From Antechinus flavipes (taxonomy: Eukaryota): a stretch of 64,000 bases of DNA. Both the position numbers and the translations under genes were made by a program. The notes beneath the pieces are model-generated. The model did no database searches. It saw only the letters and a program-made list of their open reading frames with translations, and had not been told where the DNA came from. Position 1 is the stretch's first letter; every line of letters starts with the position of its first letter. Location of the stretch: contig NC_067400.1 in NCBI RefSeq assembly GCF_016432865.1, positions 623,286,001 through 623,350,000 on the forward strand, written 5' to 3'. Of the stretch, positions 9,501-19,803 are shown piece by piece.

Positions 9501-9626
9501 TCCCCCCTGAGGCAGCCCAGAGGCAGACTCTCTGCCTCAGAACCTCACTTTGGTAAGTCTCCTCAGGGTGTGAGGAGACAAGGATCCATCCGCCTCCTGA
9601 CCCCCCTGGAGGCCCCGATCAGGACC

Positions 9627-9660
9627 ATGGGCTCCTCCCTCCCTCCCCTACTTTTATTTG
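9627..9660 (+). CDS. GP6: GP6-like exon 1 (leader, [11 protein letters not shown])
   Basis: gaccATGG start; 34 nt, the canonical LRC leader-1 size; donor gtgagt. Confidence 0.85.
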
Positions 9661-12600
9661 GTGAGTCCCAAGAAAGTGTGAGAGGGTCTCGCTGGAGAAG
9701 GGGATCTCCTGGGAGACAGAGTGGAAAACGGGTGGGGGGGGGGGGGCGAGCCTGACTGGGGAGGGGGCTGGAAGACCTGAGGCGGGGCAGGAAAGTGAGG
9801 GCACAGATCTAGTCCTGGCTGCCCAGTCCCAGCTGTGCCCTCCTGAACAAGTCATTGCCCTGCCCGGAACATCAGTTTCCCCCTCTGTGAAATAGGGGGT
9901 CAGACTCCATGATCTTAAGGTTCCTTCCAGCAAATATCTGGTGACTCTTGGAGGCCCAGAGAAACCCAGGATTCAGTCCCGGGGACATTTCTGCACCCCC
10001 GGGAGGGAAATGTTTGCCTCTCACCGGCTCTTCTCCTCTAGGCCTGGGTCTGAGCCTGGGGATCAAAGCACAAAGAGGTGAGTCTCCCCCCAGCAGACAG
10101 GCGTCCCAGAGCGGGTGCTGGGGAGGGGGAGCCGGGGAGACGGGCAGACGGGCCTGGAGCTCAGGACTCTAAATCTCTTCCAGAATTTCTCTCCAAACCC
10201 ATTCTCTGGGCAAAGCCTAGCTCCATGGTGGCCCAGGAGACGGACGTGATCCTGTGGTGCCAGGGCCCCCCTGGAGTTGACATGTACCGCCTGGAGCGAC
10301 TGGGCTCCTCCAGGGACTATAAGGACCAGCCTGGCCTTCCGGAGCCCGGAGCTCAGGCTCGGTTCCCCTTGGGGAGCGCATCCTCCAACATTGCTGGCAA
10401 GTACAGATGCTCCTACAGTACCGGGAGCCGCTGGTCACAGCCCAGCACCCAGCTGGAGCTGGTGGTGACAGGTGAGGGGAGACCCCGAGGAGACCAGCTA
10501 GCGCTGAAGCCTGGGAGCCAAGAAGGGGGAGCTGGGCTGGGGGAGCCCTGGCTCAGGGAGCAGGATCAGAGGTGGGGGAAGAAAGAGGGAGACTGAACCT
10601 TGGGGTGAGCTCCCCCGGAGGGGGTTCCCGTACAAATGCGCACAGCTCCCCGGAAGGGAGGGCGTACAAATGCGCACAGCTCCCCGGAGGGGAGGGCGTA
10701 CAAATGCGCACAGCTCCCTGGAGGGGGCTCCCTGTACAAATGCGCACAGGTCCCCGGAGGGAGGGGGACGTACAAATGCGCACAGCTCACCCGGAGCGGG
10801 GTCCCGTACAAATGCGCACAGCTCCCCGGAGGGGGGGTCCCTGTACAAATGCGCACAGCTCCCCGGAGGGGGGGTCCCTGTACAAATGCGCACAGGTCCC
10901 CGGAGGTGGGGGGCTCCCTGTACAAATGCGCACAGGTCCCCGGAGGTGGGGGGCTCCCTGTACAAATGCGCACAGGTCCCCGGAGGTGGGGGGGCTCCCT
11001 GTACAAATACGCACAGCTCCCCTGGAGGGGAGTCCCGTACAAATGCGCACAGCTCCCCCAGAGGGGAGGGCGTACAAAAGCGCACAGCTCCCCGGAGGTG
11101 GGGGGTCCCTGTACAAATGCGCACAGCTCCCCCGGAGGGGGGGCTCTCCTGGAACAGGGGGCTCCCTATAACATCCCATCTCCTTTTCCTCAGACTTGTA
11201 TGACAAACCCTTCCTCTCCATCCTGCCCAGCGCCGAGGTATCTTCCGGGGAAAGTGTCACGTTCTCCTGCAGCTCCAAACATGGCTTTAACACGTTTGTG
11301 TTGGCCAAGGAGGGCAGAGCGGGCATCTGGAAGACCCAGGAAGGGAAGTCCCCCGTCCACTTCTCCGTCCCTGCGGTGACCGCCGGCCACGGAGGCACCT
11401 ACAAGTGCTATGCATTTAACAGTCGGTTACCCTACCTGTGGACGGCCCCCAGTGAGCTGCTGGAGCTCCGGGTCAAAGGTGCGGGATGCCCAGCCAGCAT
11501 CCCCAGCCCTCTCCCGCCAGGCCTAGGACCCCTAGCTGCTCTCCAGGGCCCCCTCCTCCTCAGAGGTCGGAGGGCAGAAGGCCCATGCTTCCCAAGGGAA
11601 CCCGAGGCAGGGGACAGAGGCAGGGGTCCGAGAGGGAGCCCGGGGAGGATGAGTATCTCCGCCCAAGCTATCCCGCTCCCCCGACTCAGTCTCAGTGGCT
11701 CCTTGAGTTGAACTGATTGAAATGAGACTGAGCTAAGATGAGGGCAGAGACTCGGTGCTGTCCAGAAGTGGAGGGGGAGGGGGGAAGAGGGAGGAAGCGC
11801 CCTGGCTTTGGAACCTGGATCTCAATTCGGATCCTGTCGCTGAAAGTGGGGGCTGGGCTAGCTTCCACCAGCCTGTGCTCTCTGAGGGAGAAGGAAAGGA
11901 GGGGACAGGAGACAATAACAATACTTCCTCTATTCCCAGGACTCCCTCGAGCCCCTTCCCCAACAGAGTCAGATGCTCAGACTGGTGAGTAAGGCCGTCG
12001 CCGGGCTCCTGGGCAAAGGGTGCCCATGGCAGGCATGCATACCCGCAAAGGCTCCCCATGGTGGGATCTGTACCCACAAAGACTCCCCATGGCGGGCATC
12101 CGTACCTGTAAAAGCTCCCCATGGCGGGCATCCATACCTGCAAAGGCTCCCCATGGCGGGCATCCGTACCTGCAAAAGCTCCCCATGGTGGGATCTGTAC
12201 CCACAAAAGCTCCCCATGGCGGGCATCCATACCTGCAAAAGCTCCCCATGGCGGGCATCCATACCTGCAAAGGCTCCCCATGGCGGGCATCCGTACCTGC
12301 AAAAGCTCCTCATGGCGGGCATCCGTACCCACAAAGGCTCCCCATGGCGGGCATCCGTACCTGTAAAAGCTCCCCACAGTGGGCAGCCGCACCCCCAGCT
12401 CTCACTGGGGGCCCCACATTTTCTCGGCTGTCCTCCCTGGGGGCAGGGGTGGGGTTCAAGTAGCAGTGTGGCGGTGGGGAAAGAGCCCTGGCTTTGGAAC
12501 CAGTGCTAGGTCGGAACTGGGGCTCTGCCTCTCGCCAGCTGAGGGTTTACTGGCACCTCACTTAATTCTCTGGTGCATCTGTAAGATGGGGGCTGGGCTA

Positions 12601-14380
12601 GCTTCCACCAGCCTGTGCTCTCTGAGGGAGAAGGAAAGGAGGGGACAGGAGACAATAACTGTTACTTCCTCTTCCCAGGACCCCCTCGAGCCCCTTCCCC
12701 AACAGAGTCAGATGCTCGGGCTGGTGAGTAAGGCCGTCTCCGGGCTCCTGGGCAAAGGCTCCCCATGGCAGGCATGCATACCCGCAAAGGCTCCCCATGG
12801 CAGGCATGCATACCCGCAAAGGCTCCCCATGGTGGGATCTGTACCCACAAAGGCTCCCCATGGCGGGCATCCGTACCTGCAAAGGCTCCCCATGGCGGGC
12901 ATCCGTACCTGCAAAGGCTCCCCATGGCGGGCATCCGTACCTGCAAAGGCTCCCCATGGTGGGATCTGTACCCACAAAAGCTCCCCATGGCGGGCATCCA
13001 TACCTGCAAAAGCTCCCCATGGCGGGCATCCGTACCTGCAAAGGCTCCCCATGGCGGGCATCCGTACCTGCAAAGGCTCCCCATGGCGGGCATCCGTACC
13101 CGCAAAGGCTCCCCATGGCGGGCATCCGTACCCGCAAAGGCTCCCCACGGCGGGCATCCGCACCCCCAGCTCTCACTGGGGGCCCCACATTTTCTCGGCT
13201 GTCCTCCCTGGGGGCAGGGGTGGGGTTCAAGTAGCAGTGTGGCGGTGGGGAAAGAGCCCTGGCTTTGGAACCAGTGCTAGGTCGGAACTGGGGCTCTGCC
13301 TCTCGCCAGCTGAGGGTTTACTGGCACCTCACTTAATTCTCTGGTGCATCTGTAAGATGGGGGCTGGGCTAGCTTCCACCAGCCTGTGGTCTCTGAGGGA
13401 GAAGGAAAGGAGGGGACATGGACAATAACTGTTACTTCCTCTATTCCCAGGACCCCCTCAAGCCCCTTCCCCAACAGAGTCAGATGCTCGGGCTGGTGAG
13501 TAAGGCCGTCTCCGGGCTCCTGGGCAAAGGCTCCCCATGGTGGGCATCCGCACCCCCAGCTCCCACTGGGGGCCCCACATTTTCTGGGCTGTTTCCCTGG
13601 GGCAGGGGCGGGGTTCAGGGCTGGGACATCCCCAGGGAGAAGGACTGGAGAAGGGGCTGGCGGTCCCTGAGAAGCCCCCTGAGGCACGGCTGTCACGACA
13701 GGGTGTCCAGCTTGGCAGCCTTCCTCTGTCCAGGCTAATAAATAAGGGGCTTGGAGTCCGTGACCTCTAAGAGCCCCCCAAACGGAACCCCTGGTTCCCT
13801 CTGCTAGAGACAAGAACGAAGGAGAGTGCCTGCGGGTAGAAGAGGGCTTGGGGCGGACACAGGGGTCGCCTTTCTCTCCATTCTCTTCTCCCCGTTTCCA
13901 GGCACTCTCACGTCCCCCCACGTTCCCACAGAGAAGGAGAACATCCCAGCAGGTGAGCCGCCAGACCTCCCAGCTCCGGGAGGGGGCAGGGAGGGACCGC
14001 CACATTTCCCTGGCCTTGCCTCCCTTCTGAGTCAGGGCCCCCCTATTCCCCCACCTCCCCACCCCCCATGCCCAGGGCCCTGGCAGGAGCAGTCTTAGGG
14101 GCTGAGGCTGGTTTCCAGGGCAGCCCCCCCTCCCCCCCAGAGATCCCACCTGAGGAGAGCCCCCAGTGGGGAGGCGGCCCGGGGCCCTCTGCCCCCAGCT
14201 CATAACGGCCTTATCTCGGCAGGTCGCAGCCCCCAGGATTACACGGCGTCCAACCTCGTGCGCTTGGGCCTGGCCGCGCTGGTGGTGACGGCACTGGGGG
14301 GGCTGCTGGCCTGGCGGGGGGGATCCCGCAGGCTTTCGGGCCGCTTTTCCAGGCCCCAGACCCAGCAGCCCCACAGGTGA
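9627..14380 (+). CDS. GP6: Platelet glycoprotein VI-like activating Ig receptor (leader, 2 Ig domains, mucin stalk, Arg-containing TM, short tail), 328 aa
   Basis: Exons 9627-9660, 10042-10077, 10184-10471, 11194-11478, 11940-11984, 12679-12723, 13451-13495, 13902-13952, 14223-14380. All are GT-AG and phase 1, totalling 987 nt with no internal stop. D1 [18 protein letters not shown] vs human [18 protein letters not shown]; D2 [26 protein letters not shown] vs [35 protein letters not shown] vs NLVRICL. Confidence 0.87.
10042..10077 (+). CDS. GP6: GP6-like exon 2 (leader mini-exon, [12 protein letters not shown])
   Basis: 36-nt exon, ctctag/gtgagt; typical LRC leader-2. Confidence 0.88.
10184..10471 (+). 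CDS. GP6: GP6-like exon 3 (Ig domain D1)
   Basis: 288 nt, [12 protein letters not shown]...C...YRC...QLELVVT, ttccag/gtgagg. Confidence 0.93.
10610..11145. repeat. GC-rich minisatellite (VNTR), 14 units of 34-41 bp, in GP6 intron 3
   Basis: Invariant core gtacaaatgcgcacag(c/g)tcccc followed by variable G-runs. 14 cores counted from 10631 to 11112. Confidence 0.95.
11194..11478 (+). CDS. GP6: GP6-like exon 4 (Ig domain D2)
   Basis: 285 nt, [12 protein letters not shown]...C...YKC...LLELRVK, cctcag/gtgcgg. Confidence 0.93.
11940..11984 (+). CDS. GP6: GP6-like stalk exon 5a ([15 protein letters not shown])
   Basis: 45 nt, phase 1-1, ttcccag/gtgagt. Confidence 0.8.
12015..12385. repeat. 31-32 bp minisatellite, about 12 units (duplication unit 1)
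   Basis: ggctccccatggcgggcatccgtacctgcaaa and the variant ccccatggtgggatctgtacccacaaa. Confidence 0.95.
12679..12723 (+). CDS. GP6: GP6-like stalk exon 5b ([15 protein letters not shown])
   Basis: 45 nt, phase 1-1, ttcccag/gtgagt. Confidence 0.8.
12755..13160. repeat. 31-32 bp minisatellite, about 13 units (duplication unit 2)
   Basis: Same unit as 12015-12385. Only one copy follows exon 5c (about 13530). Confidence 0.95.
13451..13495 (+). CDS. GP6: GP6-like stalk exon 5c ([15 protein letters not shown])
   Basis: 45 nt, phase 1-1, ttcccag/gtgagt; differs from 5b by one nucleotide. Confidence 0.8.
13902..13952 (+). CDS. GP6: GP6-like stalk exon 6 ([17 protein letters not shown])
   Basis: 51 nt, long pyrimidine tract plus ttccag, donor gtgagc, phase 1-1. 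Confidence 0.8.
14223..14380 (+). CDS. GP6: GP6-like TM/cytoplasmic exon
   Basis: [59 protein letters not shown] is the signature of FcR-gamma-coupled LRC receptors. Confidence 0.9.
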
Positions 14381-16800: not shown

Positions 16801-17374
16801 GTGAGGAGGAGTCGGACCCAAGGGGCCCAGCCCCAGCAGAGTGGAGCTGGCCAGGACTGAGGACCCTCCCGGGGCCCAAGGATCCCCCTAAAGGGTAAGG
16901 GGGACGGTGGGGTGGGTGGACCCAGCCCCCGGGCAAAGAAGCCACGTGGGCGGCCGGGGGGGGGGGTGGAGGTGGGGGGAGAGACGGGCCACCGCGGAGG
17001 GCCAGGCTCACACCGGGCTGGGCTCCCCACCCCCCAGCCCTCTCCTGGAACTGGAGAACCAGTCCAGCGGGATCCAGGTGGGTGTGATTTCCGCCTGGGA
17101 GGGCCCGTGATGTTTGTAGGGGGAGGGGTAACCCAGGGACACGTGGAGGTGAGCCAGCTGGAGGAAGTAGGGAAGCTGGCCGCGCTCGGAGGGGGGTGGG
17201 GAGGGGGGCAGAGCCGGGCTCTCCGGGGACCGCTCGCTTCTCCCCCGGGAGGGGAGCCCGGAGGACTCTGGGTAGCCTGGCCCGTTGAGGGGCCGGTCGG
17301 GAACAGCAGGGAAAGCCGCTTCTCCGCCCCATCCCGAGCTCCCCGGGCTAACCCGAGCCCTCCTCTCCTCGCAG

Positions 17375-17875
17375 ATGCCCATCCTGAAACAGCTGGGCCC
17401 GGCCGTGCCCAAAAAGCGCCTGGATCGAGATGCCATCTCGGCCCCCCTGGGGGACTTTCGGCACACCATGCATGTGGGGCGCGGGGGCGATGCCTTTGGG
17501 GACACGTCCTTCCTGAGTCGCCACGGCGGCGGAGGCGGGGGTCCCGGCCCCTCCCCGGCCCCGTCCCCGGGCCCGTCCCCGGCTCCCTCGGCCGCCCCAT
17601 CCCCCGCGCGCCCTGCCCTGCCACCCCCCACGGTTCCCCAGCCCCCGCGGCCTTCGGAGGGCCAGGCCGAGTCCCGGGCGGCCGCGGGAGACCCGTTTCT
17701 GTCCTTTCACCTGGATCTGGGGCCTTCCCTCCTAGAGGAGGTGCTGGGAGTGATGGATCGAGGGGGGGCCCTAGCGGATGCAGGCGCTGCCTCGAGTGCC
17801 CCCAACGGGGGGCTGCTGCCCTCCCAGCGGGGCTTCGGCTCCGAGGAGGACCTGGATGAAGTTATCGGGCTGTAG
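17375..17875 (+). CDS. CDC42EP5: CDC42 effector protein 5 (Borg3), 166 aa
   Basis: MPILKQLGPAVPKK...ISAPLGDFRHTMHVGRGGDAFGDTSFLSRHG (CRIB), FHLDLGPSLLEEVLGVMD (BH3), ending DEVIGL*. The acceptor cag abuts the ATG. Confidence 0.97.
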   Translation: MPILKQLGPAVPKKRLDRDAISAPLGDFRHTMHVGRGGDAFGDTSFLSRHGGGGGGPGPSPAPSPGPSPAPSAAPSPARPALPPPTVPQPPRPSEGQAESRAAAGDPFLSFHLDLGPSLLEEVLGVMDRGGALADAGAASSAPNGGLLPSQRGFGSEEDLDEVIGL

Positions 17876-18035: not shown

Positions 18036-18312
18036 TAGCATTTATTTCGGCTGCTTTGGCGTCGGTGTTTCTGCGGGCTCCTGGGGCGTTAGGGAGAGTG
18101 TCTGCGGGCTCCTGGGGCGGTAGGGTGGGAGTGTCTGCGGGCTCCTGGGACAAGGGTGCTCGTGCTGGAAGAGCAACTGGGATTCTTTGGGCCTCAGTTT
18201 CTCTTTCAGGTCCTTTCCAGGCCCGTGGCCACACTAACGGTCTCTGGTGCTCCCATGGGGAGGGCTTTGGGACACGCCCTTCTTGGAGCCACACCTCCGC
18301 CCTTTCGGGGGC

Positions 18313-19803
18313 ATGACCGATAACCCCACCCCCACCCCGGCGGAGAAGGGGAACCAGCCGGGCTGGGCCGCTCCGCTGCGCGGGCCCCTTAAGAGCCTCA
18401 CCCCTGGCACACGGACTCCGAAGGGGCGTGACCGGCGAGGCCGGAAGAGCCGGGGACACCTGGGTCCCGGGAGCCAGCCCTTGGCCCTGGGCGGCGGCGG
18501 CGGCGGCGGCGGCATGGAGGAAGGGGGAGGTCCGGAGCCCGTCTGCCGCTTCTACCTGGAGGGGCGCTGCCATTTCGGGGCCCGCTGCCGGCTCCCCCAC
18601 CCCGGCGCCGAAGGCCGGGCTCGGGCTGAGCCTCTGCCGGGGCCGGCCTCGAGCCCCGAGGGCAAGAAGCCCTCCATGAAGACGGCCCAGGCGGTGATCG
18701 ACCGCATCCGCTGGGACCCTCACCTGGAGCCCGCCGACTTCTCCGTGGGCTACCTGGACCGCTTCCGCGGCGTGCAGGAAGAGCCCTTCACCGCCTTCTG
18801 CTGGGACGAGGACCTGGCTGCGCTGGGCCCCGGGGTGCTGGCCGTGCCCCAGCACCGCATCCGCTACTTCCGACACCGCGGCCGCCTCGTGTGGGACCGC
18901 GCCTCCCGCACCGACCTCGTCTTCGGCTCGGCCGCGGGCCGCGGGACCACCATCCTGGACGGGCTCGCCACGGCCGGCGGGCCCGGAGCCGGAGAAGAGG
19001 GCGGGCCCGGGACGGAGCCCGAAGGCCGGGGAGAGGAGGGCGGGCCCGGAACGGAGGCCGGAGCTGGGGAAGAGGATGGCAAACCAGGGACTGAGGCCAA
19101 AGGCCGGAGCGAGGGCAGGCCCGGAGCCCCGGAAGAGGACCGCGGACCAGAGAGGGAGCCCAAAGGCCGGGGAGAGGAGGGCGGGCCCGGGACGAGCGGC
19201 CGCTCCGACAGCGGGAGAGGGGCCGCCGAGGGCCTCCGCCCCACACATTTCGTAGCCCTCCCGATAACGGACCCGCAGCTGCGGGCAGCAGTAGTCGGGG
19301 CCCAGGCCGGCCTGGCCGGGGCCGTGAGCCCCGGAGCCCTGCACCTGACCTTGGTCTTGCTGCGCCTCGCAGGCCCCGGGGAGGTGGCCGCGGCCGCGGG
19401 GGCCCTGAGACAACTGGTCCGGGGCCCCGGCTTCCACTGTCCCAGAGCACTCCATTTCCAGAACCTGGCGTGCCTGGACCACAGACTCATCTATTCCCTC
19501 CCAAGCCCGGGCCTCGAGGGCTTAGCCCAGGCCCTGGCCCGGGGCCTCGAGGCCGAGGGGCTTCAGGTCCTGGAAGCCGCAGGCCGGGAGCTCGGCCCCC
19601 ACCTCACTCTGGCCAAACTGCCTCGGGGGAGCCCCGGGCGCTTGTCGCTACCCGAGGCCCCGGGGGACGCCGAGCTGGGCAGCCAATCGGTGGAAGAGCT
19701 CCAGCTATGCTCCGTGGGAGGGGCGCAGGGACCCGAGGCGGGGTCCTCTGTATTAGCCCAGGTGCCCCTGGTGCCCTCCACCCTGCCAGGGGCTCTCCAC
19801 TAG
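18313..19803 (+). CDS. LENG9: LENG9: CCCH zinc finger, MJ1316/DUF504 domain, AKAP7-like 2H phosphoesterase (single exon)
   Basis: CRFYLEGRCHFGARCRLPH; VIDRIRWDPHLEPADFSVGYLDRF...VPQHRIRYF...VWDRASRTD; RPTHFVAL, LHLTL, PHLTL. In-frame ATGs at 18313 (496 aa) and 18514 (strong Kozak, 429 aa); the real start is uncertain. Confidence 0.95.
   Translation: MTDNPTPTPAEKGNQPGWAAPLRGPLKSLTPGTRTPKGRDRRGRKSRGHLGPGSQPLALGGGGGGGGMEEGGGPEPVCRFYLEGRCHFGARCRLPHPGAEGRARAEPLPGPASSPEGKKPSMKTAQAVIDRIRWDPHLEPADFSVGYLDRFRGVQEEPFTAFCWDEDLAALGPGVLAVPQHRIRYFRHRGRLVWDRASRTDLVFGSAAGRGTTILDGLATAGGPGAGEEGGPGTEPEGRGEEGGPGTEAGAGEEDGKPGTEAKGRSEGRPGAPEEDRGPEREPKGRGEEGGPGTSGRSDSGRGAAEGLRPTHFVALPITDPQLRAAVVGAQAGLAGAVSPGALHLTLVLLRLAGPGEVAAAAGALRQLVRGPGFHCPRALHFQNLACLDHRLIYSLPSPGLEGLAQALARGLEAEGLQVLEAAGRELGPHLTLAKLPRGSPGRLSLPEAPGDAELGSQSVEELQLCSVGGAQGPEAGSSVLAQVPLVPSTLPGALH

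What the first reader, a model, noticed from the sequence alone, without database searches (positions are those of the whole stretch)
10184..10471. GP6-like D1 keeps the collagen-contact residues but lacks the eutherian D1 deletion (LAIR1-like, probably ancestral form)
Seen: D1 is 96 aa against 86 aa in human GP6. Between DQ and AGxYRC it reads [21 protein letters not shown] where human has AVLFIPAMKRSL, which resembles LAIR1 (ESEARFRIDSVS). Established: the human GPVI structure (Horii 2006) described an ~11-residue D1 deletion relative to other LRC receptors and proposed the resulting groove as the collagen site. The later GPVI-collagen-peptide structure (Feitsma 2022) placed binding at W76/R38/E40. 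Here the V34, R38, E40, R67 and W76 equivalents are all present, while K59/R60 are not. Inference: this is a pre-deletion GP6 linking the GP6 and LAIR1 collagen receptors, and a natural test of which surface binds collagen.
Basis: partly seen in the sequence, partly recalled or inferred. Interest (0 to 1): 0.75.

Follow-up and report, generated by a model that had tools for sequence, protein, structure and literature searches.

The report
Marsupial GPVI keeps undeleted D1 domain
The yellow-footed antechinus version of the platelet collagen receptor GPVI keeps a ten-residue strand-and-loop in its first domain that every placental GPVI examined has lost, while keeping the residues that hold collagen, so the textbook "GPVI deletion" is a placental novelty rather than a feature of the receptor as such.

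Summary
Window 10184-10471 (+) is the D1 exon of the RefSeq gene "platelet glycoprotein VI-like" of Antechinus flavipes. My eight-exon model reproduces the 313-aa protein exactly.

- **Length:** D1 is 10 residues longer than human GPVI D1.
- **Contact residues:** it keeps the V34, R38, E40, R67 and W76 equivalents. The K59 and R60 positions are Ser-Ser.
- **Generality:** 9 of 9 marsupial orthologues are long and 46 of 46 placental GP6 from all four superorders are short. More than 100 LILR, NCR1, Lrcx-like and marsupial LILR-like D1 domains are long. The long form is therefore ancestral, and the deletion arose on the placental stem.
- **Structure:** AlphaFold gives the long form a true C' strand and a longer E strand.
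- **Expression:** a spliced RNA contig from a related species carries the whole D1 exon.

Two points are weaker. Orthology with GP6 is favoured and already published for devil and koala, but my maximum-likelihood trees do not resolve it strongly against marsupial LILR-like paralogues. The extra segment is generically LRC-like, not specifically LAIR1-like. Collagen binding is inferred, not shown. This is a modest new variant of a known receptor.

The parts
9627..9660 (+). Exon 1: start codon and first part of the signal peptide
   Evidence: The exon model translates exactly to P0004. GT donor.
10042..10077 (+). Exon 2: 36-nt second signal-peptide exon, typical of LRC genes
   Evidence: AG/GT sites. 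The related species' spliced contig has 33 letters here (table 5c).
10184..10471 (+). Exon 3: Ig domain D1 (96 residues), the long, undeleted form
   Evidence: Carried uninterrupted in a spliced contig of run X8 (record 12).
10288..10296 (+). Codons R59-L60-E61, the equivalents of human GPVI R38 and E40 on strand C
   Evidence: Invariant in 9/9 marsupial and 46/46 placental GP6. Their role in collagen contact is taken from PMC8151509 and PMC10119634.
10315..10350 (+). Stretch holding the 10 residues absent from placental GPVI (D68 plus D71-G79). It forms the C' strand and the start of the C'-E loop. Gap placement can slide by a few codons.
   Evidence: HMMER and MAFFT alignments. The AlphaFold model has a C' strand at fragment residues 46-50, against a 2-residue bridge in camel GP6.
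10381..10386 (+). Ser-Ser at the positions of human K59/R60
   Evidence: These positions also vary among placentals (K in 6/11, R or K in 6/11).
10432..10434 (+). W107, the equivalent of human W76
11194..11478 (+). Exon 4: Ig domain D2
   Evidence: Human GPVI D2 scores 103 bits in one stretch; the best LILR domain scores 61 bits. Exon model.
11940..11984 (+). Stalk exon, copy 1 (45 nt, 15 residues rich in P, S and T)
12679..12723 (+). Stalk exon, copy 2. It is skipped in isoform X3 and used in other isoforms.
   Evidence: Pattern match with a flanking AG. Isoforms X5-X7.
13451..13495 (+). Stalk exon, copy 3
13902..13952 (+). Membrane-proximal stalk exon (51 nt)
14223..14380 (+). Last exon: transmembrane helix with the N-L-V-R motif (codons 14252-14263; the Arg pairs with FcR-gamma in this transmembrane subtype), a short basic tail and the stop codon
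   Evidence: The meaning of the NxxR motif is from PMC6557307.

Best explanation
This is the D1 exon of the marsupial orthologue of the platelet collagen receptor GPVI, or at the least a co-orthologue of it. The protein has a signal peptide, two Ig domains, a mucin-like stalk with a variable number of 15-residue exons, a transmembrane helix whose Arg sits in an NxxR motif for FcR-gamma, and a short tail.

D1 has the full LRC-type topology: a real C' strand and C'-E loop lie beside strand C. The collagen groove formed by strands C and F keeps the essential R/E/W triad together with V34 and R67.

The ancestor of therian GPVI had this long D1. A deletion of about 30 nt on the placental stem, before the crown placentals diverged, removed the C' strand and shortened strand E. 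That gave the short D1 seen in every placental.

Shown here: the sequence, the exon structure, splicing in a related species, the distribution of the indel across 55 GP6 sequences and more than 100 outgroups, and the predicted fold.

Inferred: the marsupial protein binds GPO collagen through the same triad, as LAIR-1 does with an undeleted domain, and signals through FcR-gamma in platelets.
For: - **Gene model:** it equals RefSeq P0004.
- **Closest solved relative:** human GPVI for both domains by sequence and for the AlphaFold model, which has pLDDT 93.6 and matches 7r58_A with TM 0.87/0.92.
- **Length of the C-to-F segment:** 34 residues in marsupials (32 in the bilby), 24 in 46/46 placental GP6, and 30-35 in all other LRC D1 domains, including NCR1, the afrotherian Lrcx-like units and the marsupial LILR-like paralogues.
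- **Signature:** V/A/M-R-E-R-W is found only in the two GP6 groups.
- **Constraint:** the extra segment is as conserved among marsupials as the rest of D1 (0.80 against 0.86).
- **Trees:** marsupial and placental GP6 are sisters in the D1 tree (SH-aLRT 87) and in the best D1D2 trees, inside a 90/90-94/95 clade.
- **Expression:** a spliced contig joins exon 1, exon 2, the full D1 exon and D2 in a related species.
- **Literature:** devil and koala genes were already called GPVI orthologues (PMC6557307, PMC4608214). Opossum platelets aggregate to collagen and to the GPVI agonist convulxin (PMC12448354). R38/E40 are central to collagen contact and homologous to LAIR-1 R59/E61 (PMC8151509).
Against: - The sister relation of marsupial and placental GP6 has weak support for D1D2 (UFboot 45, SH-aLRT 16), and D2 alone does not resolve it.
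- A clade of marsupial GP6-like with marsupial LILR-like genes is only 7.8 lnL worse and is not rejected (p = 0.22).
- One marsupial LILR-like unit (P0027) scores as high against the query as placental GP6 does.
- Immediate synteny differs. The gene lies 2.9 kb upstream of CDC42EP5 and LENG9. By my own knowledge, which I did not check here, the placental gene lies beside NLRP2 and RDH13.
- The tail lacks the proline-rich motif of placental GPVI.
- There is no direct evidence of platelet expression or of collagen binding for this protein. The tissue of the RNA contig is unknown.
Confidence: 0.7

Rival explanations
1. The gene is not a 1:1 GP6 orthologue. It would be one conserved member of the marsupial group-A (M1M2) expansion, so that placental GP6 is co-orthologous to it and to the marsupial LILR-like genes together. 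Its ligand could then differ from collagen. The long D1 would still be the ancestral state.
For: - The three groups form an unresolved polytomy inside one 94/95 clade.
- The D2 tree puts the gene with marsupial LILR-like units, with no support.
- The AU test does not reject this topology (p = 0.22).
- Three of seven marsupial LILR-like units also carry R-E-W.
- The gene sits with other LRC genes beside CDC42EP5 and LENG9.
- NCBI gives the name 'GPVI-like' to clear paralogues as well, for example wombat P0146.
Against: - The constrained tree with marsupial and placental GP6 together is the best found.
- The D1 tree supports that pairing at SH-aLRT 87.
- The five-residue signature is exclusive to the two GP6 groups.
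- D2 scores 103 bits with human GPVI against at most 61 bits for LILR domains.
- One GP6-like sequence was recovered from each of 11 marsupial species here, from opossums to dasyurids and diprotodonts.
- Two independent published trees agree on orthology (PMC4608214 with 91% bootstrap; PMC6557307).
Confidence: 0.2
2. The therian ancestor already had the short D1. Marsupials regained the segment secondarily, for example by gene conversion from a neighbouring LILR-like D1 exon.
For: The marsupial LRC is rich in paralogous D1 exons that could act as donors. The segment resembles LILR D1 and D3 motifs.
Against: - It needs two events, where one deletion is enough.
- D1 as a whole groups with placental GP6, not with marsupial LILR-like genes.
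- None of the seven sampled marsupial paralogues has a similar segment sequence.
- The segment is shared, with conserved sequence, from Monodelphis to Antechinus.
Confidence: 0.04
3. The extra residues are an annotation artefact: a cryptic intron or alternative splice site inside the exon removes them from the mature mRNA.
For: None was found. It was considered only because the difference, 30 nt, is a multiple of three.
Against: A spliced contig (run X8, record 12) covers 10182-10468 with no gap and joins it to exons 1, 2 and D2. The AlphaFold model folds the segment with pLDDT 79-86 as a strand plus loop. The segment is conserved in 9 species.
Confidence: 0.01

Closest known systems
Human and other placental platelet glycoprotein VI (GP6; PDB 2GI7, 5OU8, 7R58)
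   Same: Two Ig domains, a mucin-like stalk and an NxxR transmembrane Arg. About 50% identity over D1D2 and the best fold match (TM 0.87/0.92). The V34, R38, E40, R67 and W76 equivalents are all present.
   Different: D1 is 10 residues longer and is predicted to have a real C' strand and a longer E strand. K59/R60 are Ser-Ser. The antechinus protein lacks the N72 sequon. The tail has no proline-rich motif. The gene lies beside CDC42EP5 and LENG9.
LAIR-1 (PDB 3KGR, 3RP1)
   Same: An undeleted LRC A1-type domain that binds collagen through the homologous R59/E61/W109 triad (PMC8151509). It is therefore a precedent that a long D1 with this triad can bind collagen.
   Different: LAIR-1 has a single Ig domain and an inhibitory ITIM tail. 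It is only a distant match (52 bits for D1, 15.5 bits for the segment), weaker than the LILR and NKp46 D1 matches.
LILRA6/LILRB3, LILRB4 and LILRA5 D1 domains
   Same: The same D1 length with essentially ungapped alignment. The ...P-x-E-P-G-x-x-A-R/K-F... pattern of the C'-E region is shared.
   Different: They lack E40 and the full signature: none of more than 100 has R-E-W together with V34 and R67. They have four domains and different ligands.
Marsupial LILR-like (M1M2) paralogues, e.g. Trichosurus P0027 and P0069, Monodelphis P0074
   Same: They share the 90-95% supported clade with GP6, have a long D1, and three of seven carry R-E-W.
   Different: They have more Ig domains, lack V34 and R67, and form their own 100/95 clade.

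Membership tests
GPVI (GP6) orthologue group | Ectodomain of two LRC Ig domains (A1-type D1, A2-type D2) most similar to GPVI | tested here: met
   Best single-domain PDB scores are human GPVI D1 at 77 bits and D2 at 103 bits. The Foldseek top hit is 7r58_A. Pfam finds Ig_2, ig and Ig_3.
GPVI (GP6) orthologue group | Groups with placental GP6 in trees, to the exclusion of other LRC genes | tested here: inconclusive
   It lies in one 90/90-94/95 clade with placental GP6 and marsupial LILR-like genes. The sister relation to GP6 has SH-aLRT 87 for D1 but only 45/16 for D1D2. The AU test gives p = 0.50 for that grouping and p = 0.22 for the rival.
GPVI (GP6) orthologue group | Collagen-contact residues R38, E40 and W76 (plus V34 and R67) | tested here: met
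   Present as R59, E61, W107, V55 and R98. The signature is exclusive to GP6 groups among more than 150 D1 domains.
GPVI (GP6) orthologue group | Ten- to eleven-residue deletion in D1. This is a trait of the characterised placental proteins, not a criterion of orthology. | tested here: not met
   The C-to-F segment is 34 residues against 24 in 46/46 placental GP6. This is the finding itself.
GPVI (GP6) orthologue group | Mucin-like stalk and a transmembrane Arg in an NxxR motif for FcR-gamma | tested here: met
   P/S/T-rich 15-residue stalk exons and N-L-V-R in the last exon. Motif meaning from PMC6557307.
GPVI (GP6) orthologue group | Cytoplasmic proline-rich SH3-binding motif | tested here: not met
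   Marsupial tails lack the RPLPPLP-type run seen in sloth and hare GP6. The juxtamembrane basic residues are present.
GPVI (GP6) orthologue group | Binds collagen, CRP and convulxin; expressed on platelets and megakaryocytes | not testable with these tools
   Only indirect evidence: opossum platelets respond to collagen and convulxin (PMC12448354), and a spliced transcript exists in a related species from an unknown tissue.
GPVI (GP6) orthologue group | Placental gene neighbourhood (NLRP2 - GP6 - RDH13) | tested here: not met
   The downstream neighbours are a CDC42EP5-like gene (BORG_CEP and PBD domains) and a LENG9-like gene (MJ1316, AKAP7_NLS and CCCH domains). The gene is still inside the LRC. 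The placental neighbourhood is from my own knowledge.
LAIR-1/LAIR-2 | A single Ig domain, with an ITIM-bearing tail (LAIR-1) or secreted (LAIR-2) | tested here: not met
   The protein has two Ig domains, an activating-type transmembrane Arg, and no ITIM in the 38-residue tail.

The most novel reading that the evidence does not exclude
The marsupial gene sits beside CDC42EP5, which is where LAIR2 lies in human (my own knowledge, not checked here). It may preserve both the form and the position of a single ancestral therian collagen receptor of LRC group A. Placental GP6 would descend from it by relocation plus the D1 deletion. LAIR1/2 would descend from it by loss of D2 and a new tail. The R-E-W-bearing marsupial LILR-like genes would also descend from it. 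Collagen recognition would then be the founding function of the whole group.
Probability: 0.15. Interest if true: 0.6.

Novelty: new variant of a known kind. Interest (0 to 1): 0.35.

Why it matters
The D1 deletion has been treated as a structural hallmark of GPVI and was once proposed to create its collagen site.

This work shows that it is a placental synapomorphy. All 46 placental GP6 examined have it, and none of the 9 marsupial orthologues does. That dates the event to the placental stem.

It also provides natural "undeleted" GPVI proteins in which the validated R/E/W site coexists with a full C' strand, as in LAIR-1. Affinity, motif specificity, dimerisation and convulxin sensitivity can therefore be compared between the two architectures by simple swaps.

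The result is of interest mainly to platelet-receptor structural biologists and to those who study LRC evolution. It does not overturn current understanding.

Tried and rejected
- **First word search.** Placental GP6 came only from the representative search and from a profile query.
- **LAIR-1 sequences.** I could not fetch them as usable ids, so there is no tree with LAIR. As a proxy I searched PDB with a GP6-D1 profile and an LILR-D1 profile. LAIR-1 scored 77.7 bits with the first and fell below the listed range (under 111 bits) with the second. The two profiles are not comparable, so I drew no conclusion.
- **Horii 2006 and Feitsma 2022.** Neither is held in the library. Their claims are cited only through papers that quote them and through my own alignments.
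- **RNA runs.** No run of the species itself was found. The four runs laid are contigs of a related species about 93% identical. Three of them are mostly unspliced, so only X8 is informative.
- **Monotreme or other non-therian GP6 orthologues.** None was identified among the proteins whose names I looked up. The searches were not designed to prove absence.
- **Human GP6.** A human GP6 protein (P0269) appeared. I left it out of all further comparisons and used macaque sequences and the PDB alignments instead.
- **Model coordinates.** These are not readable in scripts, so the distance from the extra loop to the triad was not measured.
Full report
**What is at the coordinates.** Window 10184-10471 (+) is a 288-nt exon with an AG acceptor and a GT donor, in phase 1. 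Read from 10186 it gives an open 96-codon Ig domain. A word search returned RefSeq proteins called "platelet glycoprotein VI-like" of Antechinus flavipes that are 100% identical to this exon.

I mapped isoform X3 (P0004, 313 aa) back to the window. Eight exons, all with GT-AG introns, translate exactly to P0004:
- 9627-9660
- 10042-10077
- 10184-10471 (D1)
- 11194-11478 (D2)
- 11940-11984
- 13451-13495
- 13902-13952
- 14223-14380

A third copy of the 45-nt stalk exon lies at 12679-12723. The last exon carries N-L-V-R in the membrane helix and a short basic tail.

**The observation.** Against all PDB chains, the best single-domain match of D1 is human GPVI D1 at 77 bits. Query residues 2-95 align with chain residues 6-89, with gaps of one and nine residues. 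LILRA6 D1 scores 66 bits and aligns over the same length. D2 matches human GPVI D2 at 103 bits in one stretch, against at most 61 bits for any LILR domain.

The equivalents of V34, R38, E40, R67 and W76 are present, and K59/R60 are Ser-Ser.

One refinement concerns where the gap sits. The aligners place human DQAVLFIPAM on marsupial [10 protein letters not shown]. By that alignment the missing stretch is one Asp plus D-Q-P-G-L-P-E-P-G, at 10315-17 and 10324-50. The placement can slide by a few residues.

**How general it is.** Nine marsupial sequences have the long D1. They come from three dasyurids, koala, brushtail possum, tammar wallaby, sugar glider, bilby and Monodelphis. The bilby D1 is two residues shorter than the others.

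A search of 1.84 billion representative proteins and a profile search supplied placental GP6 from Xenarthra, Afrotheria, Laurasiatheria and Euarchontoglires. I measured the residues between the conserved Leu of strand C and the Gly before strand F:

| Group | C-to-F segment length (residues) |
|---|---|
| Marsupial GP6 (9) | 34 (32 in bilby) |
| Placental GP6 (46 of 46) | 24 |
| Marsupial LILR-like units (7) | 30-33 |
| Afrotherian upstream two-Ig ("Lrcx"-like) units (5) | 32-33 |
| Other LILR/NCR1-like D1 domains | 30-35 |

Only placental GP6 is short. By outgroup comparison the long form is ancestral, and one deletion on the placental stem explains the data.

The pattern V/A/M-R-E-R-W occurs in all 55 GP6 sequences and in no other D1 examined. 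The R-E-W triad alone occurs in three of seven marsupial LILR-like units and in none of the 98 others. Among marsupials the extra segment is about as conserved as the rest of D1 (0.80 against 0.86).

**Is it really GP6?** The evidence points that way but does not close the question.
- In a careful ML tree of 66 D1D2 units, rooted on IGSF1-type units, placental GP6 (100/99), marsupial GP6-like (100/100) and marsupial LILR-like paralogues form one clade (94/95). The order inside it is unresolved.
- Forcing marsupial and placental GP6 together gives the best likelihood found (AU p = 0.50). Forcing marsupial GP6-like with marsupial LILR-like costs 7.8 lnL but is not rejected (p = 0.22).
- D1 alone pairs the two GP6 groups (SH-aLRT 87). 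D2 alone does not resolve them.
- With 80 rows, including the Lrcx-like units, the two GP6 groups are again sisters, but weakly (45/16). The Lrcx-like units fall elsewhere.
- Two published studies had already called the devil and koala genes GPVI orthologues (PMC6557307; PMC4608214, 91% bootstrap).

Taking the exclusive signature and the recovery of one GP6-like sequence from each of 11 marsupial species into account as well, I put orthology or co-orthology with GP6 at about 0.75-0.8.

**Structure.** AlphaFold2 with a 125-sequence alignment models the antechinus D1D2 at mean pLDDT 93.6. In fragment numbering, which is P0004 numbering minus 23, the D1 strands are C 34-40, C' 46-50, E 58-65 and F 72-80. 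The loop at 51-57 has pLDDT of about 79-86.

The same procedure on camel GP6 (pLDDT 94.4) gives C 33-38, only a two-residue bridge at 44-45, E 49-52 and F 61-69. The long form therefore restores a real C' strand next to strand C and doubles strand E. Foldseek ranks human GPVI first (7r58_A, TM 0.87/0.92, 51% identity).

In the co-crystals the collagen-peptide groove is formed mainly by strands C and F, with R38 and E40 central (PMC10119634, PMC8151509). These residues are homologous to LAIR-1 R59 and E61, and LAIR-1 has an undeleted domain. A long D1 with this triad is thus a plausible collagen binder, and the extra C' hairpin would flank the groove rather than fill it. This last step is inference, because model coordinates could not be measured here.

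**Expression and function.** Public runs of a related species, about 93% identical, were laid on 9600-11500. One contig (run X8, record 12, 805 nt) joins exon 1, exon 2, the whole D1 exon (10182-10468, no gaps) and D2. The joint from 10468 to 11191 reads GT..AG. The extra residues are therefore in spliced RNA.

In Monodelphis, whose orthologue P0015 has the long D1, platelets adhere to collagen under flow as human platelets do. They also aggregate in response to collagen and to convulxin, a GPVI-binding agonist (PMC12448354). This fits a working GPVI but does not identify the receptor.

**The LAIR1 idea.** The 42-residue stretch from strand C to strand F matches LILRA6, LILRB4 and LILRA5 D1, and also an LILR D3 motif, at least as well as LAIR-1 (15.5 bits, E about 0.2). 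Whole D1 scores 52 bits with LAIR-1 against 66-81 bits for LILR and NKp46 D1. The segment is generic LRC, not specifically LAIR-like.

A deeper link between GP6 and LAIR is not excluded. The shared triad is one hint, and the position beside CDC42EP5 is another.

**Novelty.** The gene, its annotation and its orthology are known. I found no paper in the searchable library that mentions the D1 length difference. The scan had noted the same gene for its stalk exons and its neighbours, but not for this feature. I rate the finding a new variant of a known kind, of modest interest. The binding-site question it was meant to test has already been answered by crystal structures.

Noticed in passing
window 10608-11151: A 36-nt minisatellite of about 15 copies lies in the intron between the D1 and D2 exons. 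Contigs of the related species skip or replace parts of it (joints 10532>10770 and 10827>11164), so copy number differs between the species.
   Followed up: partly
window 10417-10425 (P0004 residues 102-104): The conserved N-G-S sequon of D1 (human N72) reads T-G-S in antechinus and I-G-S in Sminthopsis. It is kept in Sarcophilus, in the other marsupials and in nearly all the placental GP6 aligned. This D1 therefore probably lacks that N-glycan.
   Followed up: no
window 10327-10350: The extra loop carries a conserved collagen-like run, P-G-(L/P)-P-G-P, which reads G-P-P-G-P in Sminthopsis and Trichosurus. It sits next to the receptor's own collagen groove. It may be only the LRC 'EPG' motif. 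A pseudo-ligand role is a long shot.
   Followed up: no
window 14264-14380: The cytoplasmic tails of marsupial GPVI-like proteins lack the proline-rich SH3-binding run seen in placental GP6, while keeping basic juxtamembrane residues.
   Followed up: partly
window 17285-17875 and 18247-19803: The gene ends 2.9 kb upstream of a CDC42EP5-like ORF (BORG_CEP and PBD domains), which is followed by a LENG9-like ORF (MJ1316, AKAP7_NLS and CCCH domains). This is not the placental GP6 neighbourhood.
   Followed up: partly
proteins P0069, P0095, P0074 (Trichosurus, Macrotis and Monodelphis LILR-like): Three of seven marsupial LILR-like paralogues in the GP6 clade also carry the R-E-W collagen triad. They are candidate additional collagen receptors, or relics of an ancestral one.
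   Followed up: no
proteins P0184, P0187, P0050, P0108: RefSeq 'platelet glycoprotein VI' models of manatee, elephant, golden mole and elephant shrew (495-650 aa) look like fusions of an upstream two-Ig gene with GP6. The upstream gene is probably the Lrcx gene of Guselnikov and Taranin.
   Followed up: partly
window 12013-12376 and 12752-13165: Arrays with a 32-nt unit (also scored with a 127-nt period) fill the introns between the triplicated 45-nt stalk exons. They are part of the roughly 750-bp duplicated unit noted earlier by the scan.
   Followed up: no
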